The translations under genes and the position numbers were made by a program. A stretch of 63,634 nt of DNA, filler included, from Octopus bimaculoides (taxonomy: Eukaryota): assembly GCF_001194135.2 (NCBI RefSeq). It is 4 parts of 4 records of this genome, joined end to end, with 100 filler letters (N's around TTAATTAATTAA, not from the genome) between each part and the next. Parts side by side here need not be neighbours in the genome. Positions count along the whole stretch, not along the records: positions 46,563 to 58,830 come from NC_068982.1; 3 more parts are not named here. One strand, given 5' to 3'. The stretch's first letter is position 1. Each line of letters begins with the position of its first letter. Shown here in pieces: positions 7,833 through 58,830 of the stretch. The notes beneath the pieces were generated by a model, which worked only from the letters and a program-made list of their open reading frames with translations, was not told the DNA's origin and ran no database searches.

Positions 7833-8565
7833 ATAAGGTTATAACGTGAGTGCGAGACTAGTAAGAAGTTATTTAAAAGCAATTAATCATTGAGATGGAA
7901 CTGTATTTGTGTATTCATTANNNNNNNNNNNNNNNNNNNNNNNNNNNNNNNNNNNNNNNNNNNNNNNNNNNNNNNNNNNNNNNNNNNNNNNNNNNNNNNN
8001 NNNNNNNNNNNNNNNNNNNNNNNNNNNNNNNNNNNNNNNNNNNNNNNNNNNNNNNNNNNNNNNNNNNNNNNNNNNNNNNNNNNNNNNNNNNNNNNNNNNN
8101 NNNNNNNNNNNNNNNNNNNNNNNNNNNNNNNNNNNNNNNNNNNNNNNNNNNNNNNNNNNNNNNNNNNNNNNNNNNNNNNNNNNNNNNNNNNNNNNNNNNN
8201 NNNNNNNNNNNNNNNNNNNNNNNNNNNNNNNNNNNNNNNNNNNNNNNNNNNNNNNNNNNNNNNNNNNNNNNNNNNNNNNNNNNNNNNNNNNNNNNNNNNN
8301 NNNNNNNNNNNNNNNNNNNNNNNNNNNNNNNNNNNNNNNNNNNNNNNNNNNNNNNNNNNNNNNNNNNNNNNNNNNNNNNNNNNNNNNNNNNNNNNNNNNN
8401 NNNNNNNNNNNNNNNNNNNNNNNNNNNNNNNNNNNNNNNNNNNNNNNNNNNNNNNNNNNNNNNNNNNNNNNNNNNNNNNNNNNNNNNNNNNNNNNNNNNN
8501 NNNNNNNNNNNNNNNNNNNNNNNNNNNNNNNNNNNNNNNNNNNNNNNNNNNNNNNTATATATATA

Positions 8566-8721
8566 CTTCTTTCTGCTTCCGCCTACCAAATCTACTCAAA
8601 ACGCTTTGGTCGGCCCAGGGTTATTGTAGAAGACACTTCCCCAAAGATACCACGCTGTGAGACTGAACCCGTAAGCATAAGTTTGGGAAGCAAGCTTCTT
8701 GGTATACAGCCATGCCTACGC
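8566..8721 (-). mobile_element. SINE B 5' half
   Basis: Reverse of head and CTTGGG..TCTTCTAC..GGCCGACCAAAGC block. Confidence 0.8.
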
Positions 8722-8924
8722 ATTTGGTTGTGAAAGTATTTGAGCTAGAAACAATCTGGAAACAATTGCGCATGGTACCAGCGTAATTTTAGTTTAATTA
8801 TAAAATTCAGCTGAAATATCGCGTGTGGATGTAATCTGTGAACCTAAATGCAGGTCTCACTGATTTGAGGTAAAAAAAAAATATGGGATTAAGAGCCACA
8901 CACTTTCACAACAGAATATTGGTT

Positions 8925-9352
8925 TTAAATTTTGACATAGGTCCAGTAATTATAAGGAGGGGCTAAGTCAAGTACATCGACCTCAGTGTTCAATTAAGTA
9001 TTTACTACTTTATCGACCCCAAAAGGCTGAAAGGCAAAGTCGACCTCAGCGAAATTTCAACTCAGGACATAAAGACGGACGAAACGTCGCTAAGCATTTT
9101 GCCCGTCACGGTAATGATTCGCCCAACTCATCACCTTGAATATTGGTTTCAAATTTTGGCACAAGGCCAGAAATTTGGGGGAAGGAGCTAAGTTGATTAC
9201 ATCGACCCCAGCGTTCAGCTGGTACTTATTTTATCGATCCGAAAAGGATGACAGGCAAGATCGATCTCGGTGGAATTTTGAACTCAGAACGTAAAGACGG
9301 ACAAAATACCGGTAAACATTTTACCCGGCGTGCTAACGATTTTGCCAGCTTA
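8925..9352 (-). mobile_element. Two tandem SINE A copies (about 8925-9140 and 9143-9352)
   Basis: Two consecutive family A matches in the same orientation. Confidence 0.85.
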
Positions 9353-25282: not shown

Positions 25283-25283
<1 letters not shown>

Positions 25284-46562: not shown

Positions 46563-47268
46563 TCACTTAAAGCATGCGGAACCCATGCTCCATACTTCTG
46601 AACCTTTCCCATCGAGTGAAGATGCTTCTCTATAGCAGTGTGGGAACATTCCATTTTCTCTGTCAGTTCCCTTGTCGTTTGACAAGAATTTTCGTGCAAA
46701 AGTTGGTTTAATCGCTCTTCATCGAACTCAAGTGGACGGCCAGAACAAGGTGCGTCTTTGAGGTCAAAATTTCCGTTTTTGAACTTGGCATACCAATCAC
46801 AAATGGTTCTTTCAGCTATGGTACCCTCTCCATACACAGCACAAATATCGCGAGCAGCTTTTGCGGTCTTAGAACCTTGATTAAAAGCAAAAAGAAGAAG
46901 GTGTCGAAAATGCTCGTTTTTCTTAACCTGACATTTCATTCTAATGATCTGAAAATAAACAAAAATTAACTAAAATTAACTAGAAACCTTCAACTCTGAA
47001 AAGAATGGAAAAATTTACAAACATGATTAATAAAATAAAGAAGTAACATCTTTGAAATATATTTTGTTGTTGTCACTTAAAGCATGCGGAAACCATGCTC
47101 CATACTTCTGAACCTTTCCCATCGAGTGAAGATGCTTCTCTATAGCAGTGTGGGAACATTCCATTTTCTCTGTCAGTTCCCTTGTCGTTTGACAAGAATT
47201 TTCGTGCAAAAGTTGGTTTAATCGCTCTTCATCGAACTCAAGTGGACGGCCAGAACGAGGTGCGTCTT
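46563..47268 (-). mobile_element. Mariner transposase N-terminus plus duplicated fragment
   Basis: 46563-46939 MKCQVKKNEHFRHLLLF..DAPCSGRP..WVPHALS; 47073-47268 repeats 46563-46758 with 2 differences. Confidence 0.9.
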
Positions 47269-48277
47269 CCTAAATGTTAACTTCAAAGCGAAGTTAATTT
47301 TCTTTTTCAGTTTTACATGCGTAGTGTGCCAATAATTGTTTCATTATTTTGTGTGCCACGAAGTCAAACGATTGAGAACAACTGGTTTAAAAGAACAATG
47401 TAACTTTCTTTCACGGTTGATACCTCTGTACTTTTAAGAGACGGAATGATTTGACTCCGATTAAAATCTGAAGCCAAACAGCTAATATAGAAATATCTGA
47501 TTAATGGAACAAATAAAAAAAGGAAATCAATGACTTTTATTACTTTCATTGCATAGCACGGCTAATACGGGAAACAACTCTGTACATGCTTCTGTATTGT
47601 TATGATTTCATTAGGGAAATATACATCGCCATACTAGTAAGTTTTAAAAAATGCTTTATAGCTAAAAATTAAGAAAAAAAATTGCAGAAAACTAGTGTGT
47701 AATCTTTTGTTAATCATGCTTGTGTATGACATTACGAATAAAATATTTTTCAGGACACTTAGGTATTAGTAATGATATTAAGGCCCCTAAATCATATCTT
47801 TAAATAATCTGCTGCACATCTAGATTCCTCATGCGGTGCATCATTTCAGAACAACTTGGCAGAAAAAAAAAAAAAAAACAGACTTGTGATGGAGATCCGG
47901 AAGAAAACGGTTCGTATCTTACGGGAAAGGAAAAGAGTGCGAAAATAATGCGAAAGAAAAAAAATGCATGTAAATTTAAAAAAAAGTGAGAATCTTTATT
48001 TCCATTGTATGAAATAGGAGTACTAAAAAAATGAAAGAAAAAGGAGGAAAAAAGAAAAAAGAAAAAAGAACCATTTCTTTCCTCGTGAAGTGTGGGACTT
48101 TTAAACTAAAACTTTACCAAAATTATCTAGATTATAAATACCTTTCCGTAAATAATGCTACAAGTTTGAGGAGGGAGTGAAACAGTCGATGAATTTGGTA
48201 CAAATACATACAAACAAACTTGAATCCGGATTTGAACACGGAACTTCGAAGAAGTAATTAGAATTAATAACAGTAAT

Positions 48278-48474
48278 ACTTTTCTTCTCCAGGCACAAGA
48301 CCCGAAATTTTGGGGGGAGGGGGAAAGTCGATTAGATCGATCCCAATACGCAAATAGTACTTAATTAATCGACCCCGAAAGGATGAAAGGCAAAGTCGAC
48401 CTCGGCGGAATTTGAACTTAGAAGGTAAAGACACGAAATACCGCTAAGCATTTCGCCCGGCGTGCTAACGTTTC
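48278..48474 (-). mobile_element. SINE A interrupted at GCTAACGTTTC (host)
   Basis: Normal family A tail and body; stops 16 nt short of the head end. Confidence 0.88.
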
Positions 48475-48695
48475 TTATTTCTTTACTGCCCACAAGGGGC
48501 TAAACATAGAGGGGACAAACAAGGACAGACAAAGGAATTAAGTCGATTACATCGATACCAGTGTGTAACTGGTACTTAATTTATCGACCCCGAAAGGATG
48601 AAAGGCAAAGTCGACTTCGGCGGAATTTGAACTCAGAATGTAGCGGCAGACGAAATATCGCCCGGCGTGCTAACGTTTCTGCCAGCTCGCCGCCT
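48475..48695 (-). mobile_element. Chimeric SINE A-prime with Tx1-like tail
   Basis: Head+body 48537-48695, tail 48475-48536 (reverse ..GTCCCCTCTATGTTTAGCCCCTTGTGGGCAGTAAAGAAATAA). Confidence 0.88.
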
Positions 48696-48809
48696 AGATT
48701 AATAAGATCGATAAAATCAATGCAAAAATATTAACAAAGAAAGGTGGGGGGAAAGCAATTATATTATTTAGAAACATTACTAAAAACATGCACATTTTCT
48801 AATAATCCA

Positions 48810-49008
48810 TTTTTCTCAATAATAGAGGGCCTGAGATTGAGGGAGGAGGTAGTCGATTACATCGACCCCAGAGCTCAACTGGTACTTACTTCATCAATCT
48901 CGAAAGGGATGAAAGACAGTCAGCCACGGTGGAATTTGAACTCAGAATGTAAAGACGGATGAAATGCCGCGAAGCGTTTTGTCCGGCGTGGTGACGATCC
49001 TGCCAGCT
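48810..49008 (-). mobile_element. SINE A
   Basis: Family A blocks. Confidence 0.85.
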
Positions 49009-49432
49009 TTGAAAAACGACTAATAATATGTGCACCTATATTTGCACGCCCTCTTACCAACAGCGACAACACCAATAACAAAACCACTGCTCAGATTCGG
49101 GTAATCAATACGCTATCATTTGAAATAGTATATCAGCTGCAGACTTTACAGGCCGAAATAAATAATCACGATTATTGACCCCGATGAGAAAACGCCATAA
49201 CATCCAAACCAGCATCACACTTGATACAGCTAAAACTACCACTACTACTAGAAATATCTTCCCTCACTCACGACTCCACCACCACCACCACCACCAATCA
49301 CCACCGCTAACAACGACAAAAACACCAGACTGTTGAAGAGAGTCGAGTTGCTTTCTTTGTTTAAAGACGTTGCCGTCTCCACACCACCCGCAGCTGGGGT
49401 GGAGGTGACAGAAAGAGAGAGGGAGAGAGAGG

Positions 49433-49493
<61 letters not shown>

Positions 49494-49588
49494 GGGGAAG
49501 GGGAAGGAAAGAAGGAAGGAAGAGGGGAGGTACAGAGCAAAGAGATTTGATTCCTTCTTTTGTTTACTGAATACCCTTCTGCAAACAG

Positions 49589-49651
49589 GGACTCCGGACG
49601 CTGCGCTGTGGCAGATAAGTCACAGCTGAGGTCACTGCTAGCCTTACCACA
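49589..49651 (+). other. Candidate 63-nt exon (DSGRCAVADKSQLRSLLALP)
   Basis: Pyrimidine tract + AACAG acceptor, GTAAGA donor, locally GC-rich, one open frame. Confidence 0.25.
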
Positions 49652-49887
49652 GTAAGAACCGAGTCCCATAACTATTGCAGCTGTTTTATATACTGCGTTG
49701 TGGCGCCGTTGCCCAACACAACACTTCGACCAAATCTATTTCGCCCATTGTTTAAACCTAATATTTTTCATGTAGTATTTTTTCCTTCTTTCATTTTAAT
49801 AAATGTTCCCTCTGTTTATATACACAAACGCATATTTTGTTTGTTATGCATGCGTCTATTATTTTCTGAATATTACATGAACGTATC

Positions 49888-49920
<33 letters not shown>

Positions 49921-49979
49921 ACACACACACACACACTCATATGTGAAACTAAATATTCCTCTGTATGCGTGTTAGAATT

Positions 49980-50017
<38 letters not shown>

Positions 50018-50237
50018 CGTGTGTGTGTGAGTTTACGCTCGAGCGTGTGTATACGTACAACACTAACTCGTTAGACAATGTTATTACACGCCTCCAAGGT
50101 AGACACCAATGCGAGTGTGCTTGTTCGTGTTTACACAAAGACTTTATACCTGATTAGATATGCATGCATAAATACTCATATACGAATTAATATGCTTGTA
50201 TATTACTTTATACATGTATGTATACGTACATTTATGC

Positions 50238-50268
<31 letters not shown>

Positions 50269-51251
50269 CATACATACTTACANNNNNNNNNNNNNNNNNN
50301 NNNNNNNNNNNNNNNNNNNNNNNNNNNNNNNNNNNNNNNNNNNNNNNNNNNNNNNNNNNNNNNNNNNNNNNNNNNNNNNNNNNNNNNNNNNNNNNNNNNN
50401 NNNNNNNNNNNNNNNNNNNNNNNNNNNNNNNNNNNNNNNNNNNNNNNNNNNNNNNNNNNNNNNNNNNNNNNNNNNNNNNNNNNNNNNNNNNNNNNNNNNN
50501 NNNNNNNNNNNNNNNNNNNNNNNNNNNNNNNNNNNNNNNNNNNNNNNNNNNNNNNNNNNNNNNNNNNNNNNNNNNNNNNNNNNNNNNNNNNNNNNNNNNN
50601 NNNNNNNNNNNNNNNNNNNNNNNNNNNNNNNNNNNNNNNNNNNNNNNNNNNNNNNNNNNNNNNNNNNNNNNNNNNNNNNNNNNNNNNNNNNNNNNNNNNN
50701 NNNNNNNNNNNNNNNNNNNNNNNNNNNNNNNNNNNNNNNNNTATATTTATATGCATTTCAATGGCCTTTGTTTTCTATACTTGGTCTCATATTTGCACCT
50801 GGATAGTCACTCTCCAAGGTGCAGGCCTGGGAAGATTGTATTTTCTTTCTCTTTGTCTTTTTTCTTTCTTGTGGAAGACGTATTGTTGCCCATGATGCAT
50901 GCAAGTTGCACCTCTCCACATCACTAACGCTTTCCAAGTAAGTGAAGACCATTAATTACCTTGGCACCATTACCATCTCAGGCACCGTCGTCAGAAAGCA
51001 AAGAGTAGGAAGACATATTACAAAGCATACCGTGCCACACTCTACCAATTCTACTAATATCCACTCTGTAAGTGTTACTTTGCTTATCGAACCTGAATAA
51101 ATGAGAGATGAATTCGAATCATGCATGGTCTGTAATCAGAGCAGTCAGTCGGAGAAAATATCGGAAGACATTCTTTCCAACGCCTAAATAGCAGGGCTCA
51201 TCACCAGCCTTATGCGTACATACATACATGCATACATACATACATAGAGAC

Positions 51252-51282
<31 letters not shown>

Positions 51283-51297
51283 GAAACTGTGTACAGT

Positions 51298-51570
51298 AGT
51301 GGGAATTAGCTGCCTAGTGGATGTTAATATAAGACTTAAGATCAGTGAAAAAGAAAATACTTACGCTGAAAAATTGCGAAATCTGCAGCTACTCTACCTA
51401 GATTACAAGTTCAAGTTTATACCTGTAATTATTGGGGCACTGCCTAAGTACCAATCTTGAGAATTTAGACTCCTCAAAACAAGAAAGGAGGAAGCTGGTT
51501 CGAAGTCTACAAATCCAGTCATCACTAGAGCTACACAAATTTGTAAAAGTTTCCAGAAGTAAATCATATA
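51298..51570 (+). mobile_element. R4/Dong-like (RLE-endonuclease) LINE C-terminus, decayed
   Basis: GISCLVDVNIRLKISEKENTY..LRNLQLLYLDYKFKFIPVIIGAL..ICKSFQK resembles the end of RLE-type ORFs. Confidence 0.65.
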
Positions 51571-51610
51571 AGTATATATGCGCATGTCTGGACATGGAAC
51601 TATATGCATG

Positions 51611-51698
51611 AGAATGCATACATGAAACAAAGAATGCATACATGAAACAAAGAATGCATACATGAAACAAAGAATGCATACATGAAACAAAGAATGCA
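51611..51698. repeat. 20-bp tandem repeat (AGAATGCATACATGAAACAA) x4.4
   Basis: Direct sequence. Confidence 0.95.
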
Positions 51699-51885
51699 AA
51701 TCTTCAATACACTGACTCCAAATACTGCACATGTATAAACATGCATGCAAAAATATCAGGAAAGCAAAAAATATATATGTATAAATCGAAACAATTTGTT
51801 GGCCTTTTATGGTTTTTATAATTATTTATTTCCTTTTTGGATTTGGTTTGCAAGATTCTTTATGTGAGTTCGTGTGTTGAAGCAT

Positions 51886-52123
51886 ATACTGTTGTGTCTG
51901 GGGAGAATCATTCTCTTTTAGTACCTTATAATTTACACACTCAGCGGTAAAATTTCCACTTTATTTCTTCTTTATTTTTCTAAAATTTTCCTTGTATCTT
52001 GCAACCTTTTTAAGATGCAACGAAAATTTTAGAAAAATAAAGAAATAAGTGTAAATGTTACCGGTGAGCGTGTTAAACTATAAGGCACTAAATGAGAACG
52101 ACACTCCCCAGACACAACAGTAT
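51886..52123. repeat. About 240-bp imperfect palindrome
   Basis: 51886-52000 is the reverse complement of 52012-52123 with an about 11-nt loop. Confidence 0.9.
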
Positions 52124-52423
52124 AATTATTTATGTTATATAATATAATGTCATGTTACATTACATTCATAGTGTTTAATGTAATATTGTAATACAAATAA
52201 ATTATTGGATTGTCAATAGTATATCTCTATATTTAATCTATCTTTATAATTGAATTATACAAATATTTATATGGTATCCAACTGATGTGCTAGTGAATTG
52301 GGTGTTTAACACACCCATTTGAAGGATTTCTTTTCCTCAGTTTGTTACTTTACACACACACACACACATACATATGTATAAATATATATAATATATACAT
52401 AATATATATATGTTATGTATTAT

Positions 52424-52463
<40 letters not shown>

Positions 52464-52519
52464 CAAAGAATATATATGCATGTATACACACATATATGTA
52501 TATACTTACATTTACATGT

Positions 52520-52633
52520 GTATATAGATGCATATCAGGGTACAGGACGTTAGAACAATGAACTACAGACAACGGAATGAACACATAGGAAAACAGAAAG
52601 CCACTTGGAATTATTCATCAGCTGCCTCTATTC
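52520..52633 (+). repeat. Family P repeat fragment
   Basis: Reverse complement of part of 58095-58260. Confidence 0.6.
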
Positions 52634-52775
52634 NNNNNNNNNNNNNNNNNNNNNNNNNNNNNNNNNNNNNNNNNNNNNNNNNNNNNNNNNNNNNNNNNNN
52701 NNNNNNNNNNNNNNNNNNNNNNNNNNNNNNNNNNNNNNNNNNNNNNNNNNNNNNNNNNNNNNNNNNNNNNNNNNN

Positions 52776-52808
<33 letters not shown>

Positions 52809-52816
52809 GTATGTAT

Positions 52817-53846
52817 ATAGTGGTGGTCAGTGGGGGCAAGATCAAATATGAGGGATGATGGAGTACTTCCAGCTCCAATTCCTGTAGTTTCGCCAAAATC
52901 ATTTTTGCGATGTGTGGTTTGGCGTTGTCTTGCAATGAAATAGGAGTGAATTTGTTGACTAATCTAGGCTGTTCTTTTTTGTAAGTTTCTGCATCATTTG
53001 GTCCAGTTGGCTGCAGTATACTTTGGCCGTGATTGATGAGCCAGGCTTAATGAAATCATAATGGATCACACCTGCGCCAGATCACCAAACGCACACCATC
53101 AACTTCTTTTGATGAATTTTGCAGTTTGGCCTGTGTTTTGGCTGCTCGTCTTTGTCCAACCATTGTGCTGAACGTCTATGGTTGTTGTATTGGATTCATT
53201 TCTCATCGCATGTTACAATTCGATTAAAAATTATTCATTTTTGTGACAAGAAAGTAGCAAAATGCAGGTTTCCAAACGTTGCTGATTCTCATTTTCATTG
53301 AGGTCATGTGGAACCCTCTTATCCAACATTTTCACTTTACCGATTTGAACTAGGTGAGTCAATATTGTTGGTTTGCTTACACCAAACAACAACGATAATT
53401 CACGGATACTTTGAGATGGATCCGACTCGACGGTGGCTTTCAGTTCATCATTATCCACCTTTGTTTCTGGTCGACCCCATTGCTCATTTGTGAGGTTAAA
53501 GTTACCAGAACAAAATTTTGCCAACCTATTTGATACTGTCTGCTGTGTAATAACATTAAAATGAAATACTCCATTAATATTCCGAGCTGTATGTGATGCT
53601 GTATTTCGAAGAAAGAACTCATATTTCAAAACTGAAAGAATTTCCGACTTACCCATCTCTAAACAAAAATTGTAAAAAACGATTTGTAAATATTTTATAA
53701 AGCTCAAAAGGGGTTAGAATAAAGAAATAGATGTGTCAGCTTTCTAACAAAAAATAAAGATGGTCAAAATTTAATAATGACGCAAAATGAGTAGCTGTCA
53801 AAATTTACCATATACTTTACTACAAATTTCATACTTGGCGACCTAA
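52817..53846 (-). mobile_element. Mariner element with near-complete decayed transposase (ATG 53656)
   Basis: MGKSEIL..HTH; IVTCDEKWI; QDNAKPH; HPSY..DLAPTD; right terminus ..GGCGACCTAA+TA; left end lost in microsatellite. Confidence 0.9.
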
Positions 53847-53852
53847 TATATA

Positions 53853-53884
<32 letters not shown>

Positions 53885-54145
53885 CATATAAATGACGATT
53901 ATAAAGAGACCACTTCTCAACAGAATTTGCAGCCATTCAACTGTTTTCTAATCATTACTTCTCTTACAAAAGCTACCACCCCCAGAACGTGAGAGTTTTC
54001 TCCAGTTCAGAACACATGAATTTATTTCATTTTATGGATTTCATTCAGCAATGTTTTGCTTATGTTATGGTTTCTTCTATTAAACTTCTTTCCAAACAAT
54101 CAGCTTATCTGGCAAATCCTATACACAAGGACTTCATGACCTATG

Positions 54146-54199
<54 letters not shown>

Positions 54200-54256
54200 A
54201 TCTGTAAAATGTACAATATAAAGGAGGAAAAATGCATTAATACATTCATTCATATA

Positions 54257-55525
54257 CAGGGTGCGATGGGTAAATTGTCGCCATTACGTATTTCGCACTT
54301 GCTCATTGTTTCTTTTTGATTTTGTCAAATACACAGTATAATAGGGTCAGTTGGATACCGTCTGTGAGAAAAACAACACCATGACGCAATTCACTCTGCC
54401 AGAAATTTGTAAACGACATGCTGTACTGCTTGGCATTCGCTCTGGAAGCTCCAAAACGAACCTTCTAGAGTGTTTGGGTGTCAATCTGAGGATAATGCAG
54501 AGGATTCGGAAAGAGTTGGATGAGTCTAATGGTGATTACCAAGGTACGGCAGCTCGAAAAAACTCACTCTGATTGTTCTGATAAGAAAAGAACTCCTGAA
54601 TTTGTTGGTGAGATTTTGGCCATGATTGAAAACGATCCCTCCAAGTCAATCAGGTCCATCGCTAGGGACATGGGAGTGTCTGAGTTTCTTATCAGGCAGG
54701 TAGTGCATGAAGACATTCAGTATTCCTCATACATGATGAGAAAATTTTTTATCCCAAGCCATCAAGGACAGGCGGAAAAACCGCGCTACGGAGCTTTTGA
54801 ACAAACTCAAGCATCCCTTCCAACCGAACAGGCTTTGGTTTTTCTCGGACGAAAGATTTTCTGCCAGAATCAGATGGTGAACACATAGAACAACTGTTGG
54901 GTTGCTGTGTCCCCAAAACATGTACCGAGTGTGATAAAAATCAAACATCTAGTCATCATGATGTTTGGAGTGATCACTAATGACGGCGGCGTTATGCCTC
55001 CATTCATTTTCCACAGAGGCCTACATCAACTGGCTGGAGGAGGTAGTGCTGCCCTGGATCAAGAGGGTGGCTGCTGGAAGACTCTTTGTTTGGCAACAGG
55101 ACTCCGCATCATGCTACACAAGTTGGAGAACCCATTCATGGCTGGCAGATAAATTATGCGATCACATCATCCCTAACATCTAGCCACCTAACTCCCCAGA
55201 CTGCAACCCCTTGATTATTATATGTGGGGCACAATTGAGCGAGAGACCAACAAAACTCCTTATAGCACCAAAGATGAACTGAAGACAAGGATTATGGCAG
55301 CATTCACCAACTTAAACAAAGAGACCATTCAGAAGAGTTGCAGGAGATTCTGAAGTCGTCTGCAGGCCGTGGTTGAAGCCAATGGCGATTTTATTGAATA
55401 AACTTACTATTTAGTATTTCAAGATATTTTAATGTAATTTTGGTAAATATATTTGTTAAAATGAAATGTCAGTGTTACTTTTCATTTTTGCGTAATTTAG
55501 GCGACAGTTTATTCACCGCACTCTG
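54257..55525 (+). mobile_element. Full-length maT-type (DD37D) Tc1/mariner element, pseudogenised
   Basis: TIR CAGGGTGCGATGGGTAAATTGTCGCC / GGCGACAGTTTATTCACCGCACTCTG, TA on both sides; FFSDEK, QQDSA, PPNSPDCNP(L)DYY, VEANGDFIE*. Confidence 0.9.
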
Positions 55526-56954
55526 TACGTGTGTGTATGTACGTGTGTGTAAGTGTGTGTGTGAGTGCGTGTATGTATATATGTATTTATGCGTGTATAT
55601 ATATGTATGTGTATGCGCATATATTCTCTGGAGAAAATGTGCATGTTATATCACTTGGTACTGACTGAAATGAAGAATGACCGAGAACATAGATACCACG
55701 TTTCAGGGTAAACATATCGTGTACTGTTGCAGACATCGTCTAATCTACTTCACTTGCCTTAGGCATGGTGCCAAGTTATGAAACGAAGGTTACTATCTTG
55801 AACGTATCTTCTTGAAACAATTTATTGTGTGTCATTTAGTGCAGAATTTCATAGATCATTGGTGAGCGTGAGAGTAAAGAGGAAAGAATAGCAAAATAGA
55901 GAGGGAGGAATGGATGAAAAGCGAGAGCGTTGAGAGCAGCAAAATTCAAATAATGTAGATTATGCATCTCGGTAGTGTACCAACTCCAATTACTGTTTTC
56001 AATGTTCTTGATGTTTTCAATGTTTCTGTTGGAGTACAATGACAAATCTTTACATCTTTCAATCTTATTAGACCTCCTTGACGAAATATATAGACTTTAG
56101 CAATATTGCTAAACACGTGCACACTCTCATACATGTGTGTGTTTATGTATGTATACGCATATACTATATATATGTATGCATGTTTATGTACACACGCACA
56201 CAGACATGCACACACACATTTATCATGTACGGTTCTATTACTGGTGGGATCGACAAAAATAGTACTCCCAATAAAAGATAAATATCATACGGTGGATTTA
56301 AATTCAAGTTACTAATAGTTTCATGCGGTGAAAACACGATGATCTGACAAGCTTGTACAGTGTTACCAAGCAATCATTCAAGCTCAAATGTACATACAAT
56401 ATGGCTGGTCTTTTTTGAAAAGCAATGAAAAAAAGAAAGGAAGCTGGTTTTGGACTAAAACGAGAAATGGCGCTTGTTTAAAAGAAAAAAACAAAAACAC
56501 GAGAAATAACGAGAGAAAGGTAAAAGTAAAAAGCGGAATGAGAAAAAGAAAAAAGAGTTGCGTCCCTTTGGCCCATTCGAAGCATGACTAATATGGTTGG
56601 CGTACATTCATTCAATGGGGAGAAGATTAAAGTTTGTGAGACTGCGTGCTTAATCTGGAGAGAGTGGTGTTTTCCAGTTCAATAAAAGAAATTTGTCCAG
56701 ATGCTTACATTTAATAAAATTTAATAGGTTAGTAGAGCTCTTAGGGCTAAAATAGATATGAAATCTTTCAGCTAAAAAAAAAAAAGTCTTGGTCTCTTTG
56801 ATGGCGAAGATCGTTCCACGATATTTCATTTGATAATGTGTGGTGTGTTGTTGAATTTCAGATCCCGTAGCTGTCTTCATAACCACGAGTTGGAAAGAAG
56901 ACAAGCGGTTAGCGTAACTTTTCAAAAAACTATCTTCAGCATATACAAATCTAG

Positions 56955-57013
56955 TGCGGTACTCCAGCATGGCCGCAGTCAAATGACTGAAACAAGTAAA
57001 AGAGTAAAAGAGT
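56955..57013 (+). mobile_element. Isolated SINE B / CR1 3' tail
   Basis: GCGGTACTCCAGCATGGCCGCAGTCAAATGACTGAAACAAGTAAAAGAGTAAAAGAG. Confidence 0.85.
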
Positions 57014-57014
57014 A

Positions 57015-57256
57015 AGTAGTTGTTGGTGGCTTTCTACGACTTCACCAGCCCCAATTTCTCGCCTCCTAATTTCCCTGATTGTAATCCCATGGAATACTAT
57101 GTGCAGTGCACAGTTTGGAAAGAAATCAACCACTCTGCCTACAATACCCAGGGTGAACTGGTGGCCAAGATCAAGGACGTGTTGGAAGATCTTTCCAGGA
57201 CACAGCGAGGAATGCAAGCGCCAGTGGTGGAAGCTGAGGGCGGTTATTTGGAGTAA
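57015..57256 (+). mobile_element. maT-type transposase C-terminal fragment (second family)
   Basis: PPNFPDCNPMEYYV..VVEAEGGYLE*. Confidence 0.75.
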
Positions 57257-58074
57257 ACTGTTATTTCCCAGCCATAATAATAGTTGATATATCCGTATTT
57301 TTGGAAATACTTCATTTTTGGATGAGATATTGCGTTTTCTTTTGCTTTTATACAAACTATGAAATTTAGTCCGAACATTTTGTATGTAATGAACTTCATT
57401 TGCTTATAGCTGTTTCTGCTATAAGTTGCAATACAGTCATCGTAGACTGACTGTGGTATCACCTCATAGCTTCGTCGGAGTTTTAAATGGAAGTGCAATT
57501 TAATGTGGTAAAGAATTTATATCCATGGAAAACGTCACCAAAATGTAAGATCAAGTTTGAAGGGAAAGACCACTCCTGGAAATATGTAGTCTTAGATAAA
57601 TTCGTGTATATATATATGTGTACTGGTGGACATACTATCTATCTATCTATTTATCTATCTATCTTTCTTCTTACCTATCTCCCCGTCCCGTTCTGTTTCC
57701 TTCTGTTGTTCTTGCTTCTCCCCTTCACTGCTACACATATCTCTCTCTTACTCTTCCTCCCTGTCTCTCGTCTCTCACCTTCGTTCCACTTCCTCCCTTT
57801 TCCTCCCTCCACCACTCCTCTTTGCTCACATGTGACCCGCGGTCACTTCTTCCTTTCTCACCCCAGCTGGCATAAAGGCAAAACGAAACTACTATTTCTC
57901 CGTCCAGCTTCGTCATATCACAAGCGTTCAATATCTCATCGCGTTTGGCCCTACGGCCTTTTAATGTTGTTTTCACTGTCTAATTTTTCCTGTCTTGGTT
58001 TGTGTTTGCTACCTTGGAAGTCTCTGTTTAGTGAGTTAATCCACTACTCAGGAAGAACTATTCTAAGAGTGCGT

Positions 58075-58260
58075 CCTACCTTATCTTCGAAACGCCTAGT
58101 TTAGAATAGAGGCAGCTGATGAAGGAATAATTCCATAAGTGGCTCGTCTGTATTCCTATGTGTTCGTTCTGTTGTCTTTAAACAAAGTCCGTTTTGGTTT
58201 TTTATGTCCCCGTTCACTTTTCTGACGTCCTGTACCCGGATATGCATTTATATATACATG
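58075..58260 (-). repeat. Family P repeat
   Basis: CTTCGAAACGC..CTGATGAAGG..GACGTCCTGTACCC. Confidence 0.6.
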
Positions 58261-58317
58261 TAGATGTAGGTATGTACATATATGTATGTATACATGCATA
58301 TGCTCATATATCATTTG

Positions 58318-58357
<40 letters not shown>

Positions 58358-58365
58358 ACATATAC

Positions 58366-58422
<57 letters not shown>

Positions 58423-58454
58423 TCTCATACACACACACAAACACACACATATAC

Positions 58455-58790
58455 AAATAAACACACGCGTTGCTGTGTAGTAAGAAGCTTGCTCTTCAAC
58501 CACACGGGGCCGACCAAAACCTTAGTAGATGGAAACCGACCGAAAAGAGCCCGTCGCATATAGTTATATATCTATCTATGTATGTGTCGTTGTGTCTATG
58601 TTTGTCCCACCGCTTGTCAACCTGTGTTGGTGTGTTTAAGTCCCCGTAACTTAGCGGGCAGGCAAAAATGACCGGTAGAATATGTACCAGCCTTAACTAA
58701 AATAAGTACCGGGGTCGATTCGTTCGACTAAAAATTCTGTGTGGCCGCAGTCTAATGATTGAAACGAGTAAAAGATAATAAAAGATATAT
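58455..58790 (+). mobile_element. SINE B, diverged
   Basis: GCTGTGTAGTAAGAAGCTTGC..GGCCGACCAAAA..TGTTTGTCCC..GTGGCCGCAG. Confidence 0.8.
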
Positions 58791-58791
58791 A

Positions 58792-58830
<39 letters not shown>

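What the first reader, a model, noticed from the sequence alone, without database searches (positions are those of the whole stretch)
48278..48695. Chimeric SINE with a Tx1-type tail that appears to target AGAAAC, including the head of its own parent family
Seen: a SINE A head/body ends not in the normal A tail but in an about 62-nt tail (..TTTGTCCCCTCTATGTTTAGCCCCTTGTGGGCAGTAAAGAAATAAGAAAC). This tail resembles the 3' end of the Tx1 LINE at 25283 (..TTCGTCCCATCTTTGTTGAGCCTTGTGTGGCTAATAAAAGAAAT). Here it sits at CAGAAAC/GTTAGC inside another SINE A head; the second copy (37-278) also sits at CAGAAAC. The tail's last bases copy the target. Known: SINEs recruit LINE machinery through shared 3' tails, and several Tx1 families are sequence-specific. 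Inference: a SINE captured the tail of a site-specific Tx1 partner and now nests into its own family. I do not know whether this has been described.
Basis: partly seen in the sequence, partly recalled or inferred. Interest (0 to 1): 0.8.

Follow-up and report, generated by a model that had tools for sequence, protein, structure and literature searches.

The report
Octopus SINE nested in sister SINE
A young octopus SINE copy carrying an alternative LINE-like tail has landed inside the head of an older copy of the same SINE family; this is a common, ordinary subfamily that often, but not only, hits its own relatives, and it is not specific for AGAAAC.

Summary
On the minus strand, a SINE head and body ends in a distinct tail (48476-48541, 66 nt). 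The tail abuts ...GGC^AGAAACGTTAGC of a second SINE copy that carries the usual tail.

There is only one head. The whole pair is flanked by a single target-site duplication, and a perfect 23-nt repeat brackets a 182-nt, 5'-truncated insert.

In about 210 kb of Octopus bimaculoides, O. sinensis and O. vulgaris DNA I found 13 more copies of this tail type. It is a regular, recently active subfamily.

Its canonical end is ...AAAGAAAT(A), so AGAAAC belongs to the host and is not copied by the tail.

Targets are varied and A/T-rich, with duplications of 0-21 bp:
- Only the window copy sits at the head AGAAAC.
- Two others sit at ^AGAAAG, and a fourth at ^AGATAT.
- Three junctions lie at GCG^GTATTTCG.
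- 5 of 13 events lie in or at same-orientation family copies (p about 0.003-0.04).

Copies with the usual tails also form head-to-tail arrays.

Verdict: ordinary nested SINE insertion with a modest preference for its own family.

The parts
48696..48706 (-). Upstream copy of the host SINE's target-site duplication (CTTATTAATCT), immediately 5' of the single head
   Evidence: Read. It matches CTGTTATTAATTCT at 48260-48273 apart from two 1-nt indels.
48658..48695 (-). The single SINE head, AGGCGGCGAGCTGGC followed by AGAAACGTTAGCACGCCGGGCGA. On the preferred reading this is the 5' part of the older host copy. Its last 23 nt (48658-48680) are the upstream copy of the duplication made by the nested insertion.
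   Evidence: The 23-nt stretch is identical to 48453-48475 (family D16). The rest of the two monomers is only 81-85% alike.
48476..48657 (-). Nested T-subfamily SINE insert, 5'-truncated. It starts at TATTTCG (family position about 51) and ends ...GGGCAGTAAAGAAATA. It is 3.6% diverged from the T consensus.
   Evidence: Alignment with 10 other T copies shows an apparent 12-nt gap exactly at the end of the 23-nt repeat. Other T copies are also 5'-truncated (L014:21583, L015:21194, L019:10707, L020:8065).
48476..48541 (-). The variant (T-type) 66-nt tail: TTAATTCC TTTGTCTGTCC TTGTTTGTCCCC TCTATGTTTA GCCCCTTGTGGGC AGTAAAGAAATA
Evidence: The same tail occurs in 13 other copies from O. bimaculoides, O. 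sinensis, O. vulgaris and an ENA contig.
48488..48500 (-). Small hairpin in the tail, GCCC[CUUGU]GGGC
   Evidence: The same loop with class-specific stems occurs in the usual tails: AGGC/GCCU in N1 and UGGC/GCCA in N2. 88.5% of cells pair, and 0 of 500 shuffles reach this. The hairpin is not the minimum-energy fold of the T tail, so this is suggestive only.
48453..48475 (-). Downstream copy of the 23-nt repeat.
48274..48475 (-). Remainder of the host SINE (usual N1-type tail), from family position 16 (AGAAAC) to ...CTTGTGCCTGGAGAAGAAAAGTATTA
   Evidence: The tail aligns with N1 tails from other loci.
48260..48273 (-). Downstream copy of the host SINE's target-site duplication (CTGTTATTAATTCT)
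48830..49008 (-). A third, older copy of the same SINE family (73-77% alike to the others), about 130 nt upstream. It gives family context and is not part of the nested pair.

Best explanation
The locus is an ordinary nested retroposition.

Step 1. An older copy of the abundant octopus SINE, with the usual N1 tail, inserted and made the duplication CT(G)TTATTAAT(T)CT.

Step 2. A copy of a younger subfamily (T) later entered it by target-primed reverse transcription. T has the same head and body but a different 66-nt LINE-like tail ending ...AAAGAAATA.
- The bottom strand was nicked at GGC^AGAAAC in the host head.
- The cDNA was 5'-truncated at about position 51.
- 23 nt of host head were duplicated.

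Because insert and host are homologous and in the same orientation, the product looks like one complete SINE with a strange tail, followed by a headless SINE.

Shown: the anatomy, the canonical tail end, the existence and youth of the T subfamily, and its varied targets. Inferred: the order of events and the priming mechanism.

The T subfamily is presumably moved by a LINE whose 3' end carries the same tail module. That LINE was not recovered and its clade is unknown.

T copies prefer A/T-rich starts, and more of them than expected land in or at same-orientation members of their own family. There is a recurrent site at GCG^GTATTTCG, but no single recognition sequence.
For: - Anatomy: one head; a perfect 23-nt direct repeat (48658-48680 = 48453-48475) bracketing a 182-nt insert; outer duplication at 48696-48706 and 48260-48273.
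- The insert's apparent 12-nt deletion begins exactly at the end of the repeat. One truncated insertion explains it without a second event.
- The T subfamily is real: 13 further copies in L011, L014, L015, L019 and L020, 3.4-10.3% from their consensus.
- A true nested case keeps both host halves: L015:5670-5891, with 14-nt duplication GTATGTC[G/A]CTTGTC.
- Stand-alone copies have 15-21-nt duplications: L015:8774, 16128, 32383; L020:8077.
- Empty site: L019:10707-10837 is absent in O. sinensis, which fixes the insert's end at ...AAAGAAAT.
- The second monomers of two such pairs (window and L011) start at different host positions (16 and about 125). They are about 70% alike, against 89% for the first monomers, so these are independent events.
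- Enrichment in the family: 4 of 12 unbiased events against 5.4% coverage.
Against: - A 23-nt duplication is longer than the 0-21 nt seen in other copies.
- The 23-nt repeat equals the family consensus, so two little-diverged copies could share it by chance (my estimate is about 5%).
- An in-register join of a full-length cDNA plus a private 12-nt deletion gives the same sequence. So does a template switch of the reverse transcriptase from an N1 RNA to a T RNA within one event.
- The partner LINE was never seen.
- The sample is 13 events from a few loci, some of them SINE-rich.
- Usual-tail copies also form head-to-tail arrays, so clustering is not special to T.
Confidence: 0.7

Rival explanations
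1. Single-event chimera. During one retroposition the reverse transcriptase copied a usual (N1) SINE RNA from its 3' end to position 16. It then switched to the 3' end of a T-subfamily RNA and copied that to its 5' end. The pair was integrated together, flanked by one duplication.
For: - There is one head, both parts are in the same orientation, and one outer duplication flanks both.
- L012:22205-22592 holds two complete usual-type copies joined by TAATTAAA and flanked by one duplication, TACTTGGACGTAT. Multi-unit products of some kind therefore exist.
Against: - It does not explain the 12-nt gap that starts exactly where the 23-nt repeat ends.
- L015:5670 shows a DNA-level nested insertion with its own duplication.
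- The L011 host remnant is much more diverged than the T copy in front of it. That fits a young element entering an old one.
Confidence: 0.12
2. The T subfamily is driven by a sequence-specific Tx1 LINE that recognises AGAAAC, so it homes to the head of its own family.
For: - Three of 14 junctions begin ^AGAAA[C/G]: window, L014:21702 and L015:21350. A fourth begins ^AGATAT (L020:2491). All four are in the GGGCA/GGACA tail variant, 4 of 7, against 0 of 6 for the GGGTA variant (Fisher p about 0.05).
- L1-Tx1 LINEs are recently active in O. vulgaris (PMC13282606).
- A SINE that inherits the target preference of a Tx1 partner is documented (PMC4494074).
Against: - Only 1 of 13 events is in the head AGAAAC. 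The other two AGAAAG sites are in a Tc1-like transposon and at the end of a usual SINE tail.
- Nine events start with other motifs.
- Duplications vary from 0 to about 21 nt.
- No Tx1 LINE body was seen.
Confidence: 0.08
3. The pair is a copy of a fixed dimeric SINE family, or a local tandem duplication.
For: Tandem amplification does occur. The two-unit array L015:30532-30947 has four units at the orthologous O. vulgaris site, L019:27173-27946, with nearly identical units.
Against: - In the window the two monomers have different tail types and are only 81-85% alike.
- Other pairs have different junction positions (16, about 50, about 125) and different partners.
Confidence: 0.05

Closest known systems
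LINE/SINE pairs with a shared 3' tail, such as UnaL2/UnaSINE1 (Kajikawa and Okada 2002; Ohshima et al. 1996; from my own knowledge and as cited in PMC4494074)
   Same: The element is built as head, body and LINE-like tail. The tail has a small hairpin followed by a short A-rich end. Subfamilies share head and body but differ in the tail module. Insertions make target-site duplications and are often 5'-truncated.
   Different: The partner LINE is not identified here. The hairpin rests on between-class covariation only.
SINEU families mobilised by Tx1-Mar LINEs in crocodilians (Kojima 2015, PMC4494074)
   Same: A SINE whose insertions are enriched in one other repeat family. Tandem SINE copies occur. 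By that paper's rule (more than 20% of flanks of one kind), 5 of 13 T events in or at the family would count as a target preference.
   Different: SINEU-3 goes almost always to one site of one Mariner family and makes a defined duplication. Here the sites within the SINE differ (positions 16, about 50, about 125, and the tail end) and most insertions are elsewhere. The target is the element's own family. The partner's clade is unknown.
Alu-in-Alu and SINE cluster formation through L1-type endonuclease preference for A/T-rich sites (my own knowledge)
   Same: New copies land in or next to older same-family copies, often at A-rich tails, producing head-to-tail arrays.
   Different: The recurrent internal site GCG^GTATTTCG is not an A-rich tail.
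U6/L1-type chimeric retrotranscripts made by template switching (Buzdin and colleagues; my own knowledge)
   Same: A full-length 5' partner, a 5'-truncated 3' partner, the same orientation and one flanking duplication.
   Different: No terminal T-run of a Pol III transcript lies at the junction. The 23-nt repeat and the coincident 12-nt gap fit a DNA-level insertion better.

Membership tests
LINE-dependent SINE (head, body, LINE-like tail) | Many dispersed copies with individual flanks and target-site duplications | tested here: met
   There are 60 BLAST matches to the family head and body in about 210 kb. T copies have 13-21-nt duplications, and one has an empty site in a sister species.
LINE-dependent SINE (head, body, LINE-like tail) | Head derived from a small RNA gene with Pol III A and B boxes | tested here: inconclusive
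   A B-box-like motif, GAGTTCAAATTCC, is visible by eye. ARAGORN finds no tRNA, and Rfam finds nothing even at E up to 10 on the head alone.
LINE-dependent SINE (head, body, LINE-like tail) | 3' tail shared with a partner LINE | tested here: inconclusive
T-like tails that are not attached to this SINE occur at L019:19288-19438 (a 150-nt O. vulgaris-specific insert) and at L018:13615-13680. No LINE reading frame was found upstream of any such tail.
Tx1-clade-driven, target-specific SINE (SINEU / Tx1-Mar type) | Partner LINE belongs to the Tx1 clade (tree of the endonuclease and reverse transcriptase) | not testable with these tools
No partner LINE sequence could be obtained.
Tx1-clade-driven, target-specific SINE (SINEU / Tx1-Mar type) | One defined target sequence in most insertions (here AGAAAC in the SINE head) | tested here: not met
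   1 of 13 independent events is at the head AGAAAC, and 3 of 14 junctions begin ^AGAAA[C/G]. The others differ.
Tx1-clade-driven, target-specific SINE (SINEU / Tx1-Mar type) | More than 20% of flanks belong to one repeat family (criterion of PMC4494074) | tested here: met
   5 of 13 events (4 of 12 without the window copy) are in or at same-orientation copies of the SINE family, against 5.4% coverage. The sample is small, and usual-tail copies cluster too.
Fixed dimeric SINE family | The same junction and equal divergence of both halves in independent loci | tested here: not met
   The junctions lie at host positions 16, about 50 and about 125. Between the window and L011, second monomers are about 70% alike against 89% for first monomers.
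Template-switch chimeric retrotranscript | A single duplication flanking a full-length 5' part and a 5'-truncated 3' part | tested here: inconclusive
   The layout fits, but a nested insertion into a homologous host predicts the same layout.

The most novel reading that the evidence does not exclude
The T subfamily, and perhaps the whole SINE family, has a real self-directed insertion bias with variant-specific hot spots: GCG^GTATTTCG for copies with ...GGGTA.. tails and ^AGAAA[C/G] for ...GGGCA.. tails. One possible cause is that master copies nested in family members make read-through transcripts. The 3' flank of such a transcript would pair with the same site in other copies, giving homology-guided re-insertion that seeds SINE arrays.
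Probability: 0.15. Interest if true: 0.55.

Novelty: new member of a known kind. Interest (0 to 1): 0.25.

Why it matters
SINEs make up about 11.6% of the O. vulgaris genome, and nearly all of its recently active SINE families are unclassified (PMC13282606). A defined tail-variant subfamily is therefore a useful handle for pairing octopus SINEs with their LINEs and for dating insertions. This one has presence/absence differences between O. vulgaris and O. sinensis and a measurable bias towards its own family. For genome annotation, the point is that an apparent complete SINE with an odd tail followed by a headless SINE is a nested insertion, not a new composite element. Beyond that, the locus is ordinary.

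Tried and rejected
- Exact-pattern scans of the tail in viral, metagenome and prokaryote-genome collections gave only chance bacterial hits, in an RND pump gene and others.
- A composite query of six-frame translations of the tail found nothing in the protein collection.
- An antisense SINE reading frame found one ENA contig, L011.
- No reading frame of the piece is on record in the collection.
- A literature search for SINE sequence strings found nothing.
- Two ENA contigs with the same mariner (L016, L017) carry no copy of this SINE, so they are not octopus.
- I first suspected that the T tail and the usual tail are plainly homologous. Local alignment gives only p about 0.01. Only the hairpin and the A-rich end are shared.
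- I first took the near-identical O. sinensis dimer (L015:30532-30947) for a repeated insertion. The four-unit O. vulgaris ortholog shows it is tandem amplification.
- The LINE reading-frame fragments I saw (L020:2984-3853, which ends in (ATT)n, and L019:15060-15620) do not carry the T tail.
- The reading frame upstream of the T-like tail in L018 is an unrelated DUF7083 fragment.

Full report
**What is in the window**

Only 46563-58830 is real sequence, with N gaps at 50283-50741 and 52634-52775. It holds three copies of one SINE family, all on the minus strand between 48274 and 49008.

Read on the minus strand, the finding runs as follows:
- flank CTTATTAATCT (48706-48696);
- head AGGCGGCGAGCTGGCAGAAACGTTAGCACGCCGGGCGA (48695-48658);
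- body from TATTTCG... to ...GTAATCGAC;
- a 66-nt tail, TTAATTCC...GCCCCTTGTGGGCAGTAAAGAAATA (48541-48476);
- then AGAAACGTTAGCACGCCGGGCGAAATGCTTAGCGG..., a second copy that lacks its first 15 nt and ends in the usual tail ...CTTGTGCCTGGAGAAGAAAAGTATTA (48274);
- then CTGTTATTAATTCT (48273-48260).

Three details differ from it:
- There is one head only.
- One duplication flanks the whole pair.
- A perfect 23-nt repeat, AGAAACGTTAGCACGCCGGGCGA, occurs at 48680-48658 and 48475-48453 (family D16).

**Getting comparison data**

No cephalopod genome is in the DNA collections. Tail patterns hit only bacterial genes by chance.

An antisense reading frame of the SINE found one ENA metagenome contig, L011. 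It carries an independent copy with the same tail.

The mariner reading frame at the edge of the piece retrieved annotated Octopus proteins. Through them I obtained chromosome segments of three species:
- O. bimaculoides: L012, L013, L014, L018;
- O. sinensis: L015;
- O. vulgaris: L019, which is orthologous to L015, and L020.

Together with the piece this gives about 210 kb without N.

**The tail type is a regular subfamily**

The family's copies fall into three tail classes:
- N1: ...CCCCCAAAATTTCGGGCCTTGTGCCTAGAGTAGAAAAGAATA, often followed by (ATT)n.
- N2: ...TTAAAATTGCTGGCCTTGTGCCAAAATTTGAAACCAATATTA.
- T: GACTTAATCCCTTTGTCTGTCCTTGTTTGTCCCCTCTATGTTTAGCCCCTTGTGGGTAGTAAAGAAATA.

Outside the window I found T copies at these places:
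- L011;
- L014:21583-21702;
- eight places in L015;
- further places in L019 and L020.

They differ from their consensus by 3.4-10.3%; the window copy differs by 3.6%.

One copy, L019:10707-10837, is present in O. vulgaris and absent at the exact orthologous site of O. sinensis. This shows recent activity. It also shows that the insert ends ...AAAGAAAT, with no duplication in that case.

**Relation of the tail to other tails and to a LINE**

With N1 it aligns only weakly (p about 0.01), and with N2 p is about 0.08. N1 and N2 are clearly alike (p = 0.0002).

All three classes can form a 4-bp hairpin with the same loop, CUUGU, and class-specific stems: GCCC/GGGC in T, AGGC/GCCU in N1 and UGGC/GCCA in N2. 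On 24 tails, 88.5% of cells pair, 20 cells have changes on both sides, and 0 of 500 shuffles reach either value. Slid controls pair at 52% or less.

These changes separate classes, so they represent only two or three events. The hairpin is also not the minimum-energy fold of the T tail. I treat it as a hint that the three tails come from related LINEs.

T-like tails that are not attached to this SINE exist at two places:
- L019:19288-19438, a 150-nt O. vulgaris-specific insert with duplication TATTT;
- L018:13615-13680.

Neither leads into a LINE reading frame. L1-Tx1, CR1, RTE and Dong-R4 LINEs are all recently active in O. vulgaris (PMC13282606). The clade of the partner is therefore open.

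**Where T copies insert**

The sequence after ...AAAGAAAT(A) at each junction is:

| Copy | Junction | Context |
|---|---|---|
| Window | AGAAAC GTTAGC | family head, position 16 |
| L011 | AATAT ATTAAGT | family body, position about 125 |
| L014 | AGAAAGGATGCC | Tc1-like transposon |
| L015:5670 | GGTATGTC | family position about 50; a true nested insertion with 14-15-nt duplication and both host halves present |
| L015:29493 | GGTATTTCG | family position about 50; pair flanked by AAT[C/G]AAA[A/G]ACTGTCT |
| L015:30716 array, inner | GGTATTTCGG | internal junction of the array |
| L015:30716 array, outer | GGTTATTTGC | 17-nt duplication |
| L015:21194 | AGAAAGAAT | last bases of an N1 tail, 15-nt duplication |
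| L015:8774 | TATATGTAG | 15-nt duplication |
| L015:16128 | TAATATTCC | 16-nt duplication |
| L015:32383 | TATAGTGTGG | 17-nt duplication |
| L019:10707 | AGGTACTGG | no duplication |
| L020:2491 | AGATATAT.. | (TA)n |
| L020:8077 | TATATATGTGCAT | about 20-nt duplication |

There is thus no single target. The starts are A/T-rich. ^AGAAA[C/G] occurs three times, and ^AGATAT once, all four in the GGGCA/GGACA variant of the tail. GCG^GTATTTCG occurs three times. One of those three is the internal junction of an array that has two units in O. sinensis and four in O. vulgaris, which means tandem amplification.

Counting the array once gives 13 independent events. Five of them (four of twelve without the window copy, which was picked because it looked odd) lie in or at a same-orientation family copy. 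Family coverage of these loci is 5.4%. The binomial p is 0.003, or 0.0002 if orientation is counted. It is 0.04 with the published 11.6% SINE content.

Usual-tail copies also stand head to tail:
- N1 copies are followed at once by the next head after their (ATT)n.
- Two complete N1 copies lie inside one duplication at L012:22205-22592.

Clustering is therefore a property of the whole family and not of the T tail alone.

**Reading of the window locus**

The simplest account needs two events. An N1 copy inserted first and made the outer duplication. A T cDNA, truncated at about position 51, was then inserted at GGC^AGAAAC of its head with a 23-nt duplication.

This explains three things at once:
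- why there is one head;
- why the 23-nt repeat is perfect while the monomers are otherwise 81-85% alike;
- why the first monomer seems to lack 12 nt exactly after the repeat.

Two alternatives remain possible. One is a full-length cDNA joined in register through homology, plus a private deletion. The other is a template switch within one event. A fixed dimeric family is excluded: pairs in other loci have other junctions and unequal divergence of the halves.

**Verdict**

The "62-nt tail ending in AAGAAAC" should be a 66-nt tail ending in AAAGAAATA. AGAAAC is the host's own sequence.

The subfamily is common and young. Its insertions are biased towards its own family but are not AGAAAC-specific. 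The Tx1 link could not be tested.

SINE subfamilies with exchanged LINE-type tails, SINE-in-SINE nesting, and SINEs that inherit a LINE's target preference (PMC4494074) are all known. This is a new member of a known kind and of modest interest.

Noticed in passing
window 46563-46939 (-), with 46563-46758 repeated at 47073-47268: N-terminal HTH part of a Mos1-type mariner transposase, 84-90% alike to annotated 'SETMAR-like' proteins of Octopus and, oddly, of a bee (Habropoda). A 196-nt stretch is duplicated 510 nt away at 99% identity, which could be a tandem duplication or an assembly artefact.
   Followed up: partly
window 53231-53707 (-), 54351-55183 (+), 57020-57256 (+): Further decayed mariner/Tc1-like transposase reading frames. 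The piece is a patchwork of DNA transposon remnants, SINEs and microsatellites.
   Followed up: no
window 56970-57012 and 58742-58784: A repeated motif, TGGCCGCAGTCAAATGACTGAAAC..AGTAAAAGAG. Its translation (HGRSQMTETSKRVK) also appears in a reading frame of L014:8177-8671. It is probably the end of another repeat family.
   Followed up: no
window 51591-51710: Five tandem copies of a 20-nt unit, AGAATGCATACATGAAACAA.
   Followed up: no
L012:22205-22592 (-): Two complete usual-tail SINE copies joined by TAATTAAA and flanked by a single duplication, TACTTGGACGTAT. This is either a dimer made in one event or an insertion at the very 5' edge of an older copy.
   Followed up: partly
L015:30532-30947 (-) and L019:27173-27946 (-): The same T-type SINE locus has two near-identical units in O. 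sinensis and four in O. vulgaris (unit about 184 nt, from position about 47 to the tail end). A SINE is turning into a small tandem array.
   Followed up: partly
L015:29258-29548 against L019:26193: About 290 nt spanning the end of one SINE and the head of the next are missing in O. vulgaris. This is consistent with recombination between adjacent same-orientation SINE copies.
   Followed up: no
L019:19288-19438: A 150-nt O. vulgaris-specific insertion (empty site in O. sinensis, duplication TATTT). It is not this SINE but ends in a related tail, CTTGTCCCATCTGTGTGCAGCCCTGTGTGGCCAATAAATAAAC. It may be a truncated end of the partner LINE or of a relative.
   Followed up: partly
L018:13615-13680 (-): Another T-like tail not attached to the SINE (…TATGTCTGTCTTTGTATTGTCCC…GGTGGCAAATAAAAGAAAC). 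It ends in AAGAAAC and lies downstream of a DUF7083 reading-frame fragment.
   Followed up: partly
L018:12990-13590 (-), 8478-9001 (-): Usual-tail SINE copies end in long (ATT)n runs, and the next copy's head starts immediately after. This gives head-to-tail arrays, some with 5'-truncated units.
   Followed up: no
L020:2984-3853 (-): A LINE reverse-transcriptase fragment whose 3' end is an (ATT)n run. It may be related to the partner of the usual (ATT)n-ended SINE tails, although its untranslated end does not resemble them.
   Followed up: no
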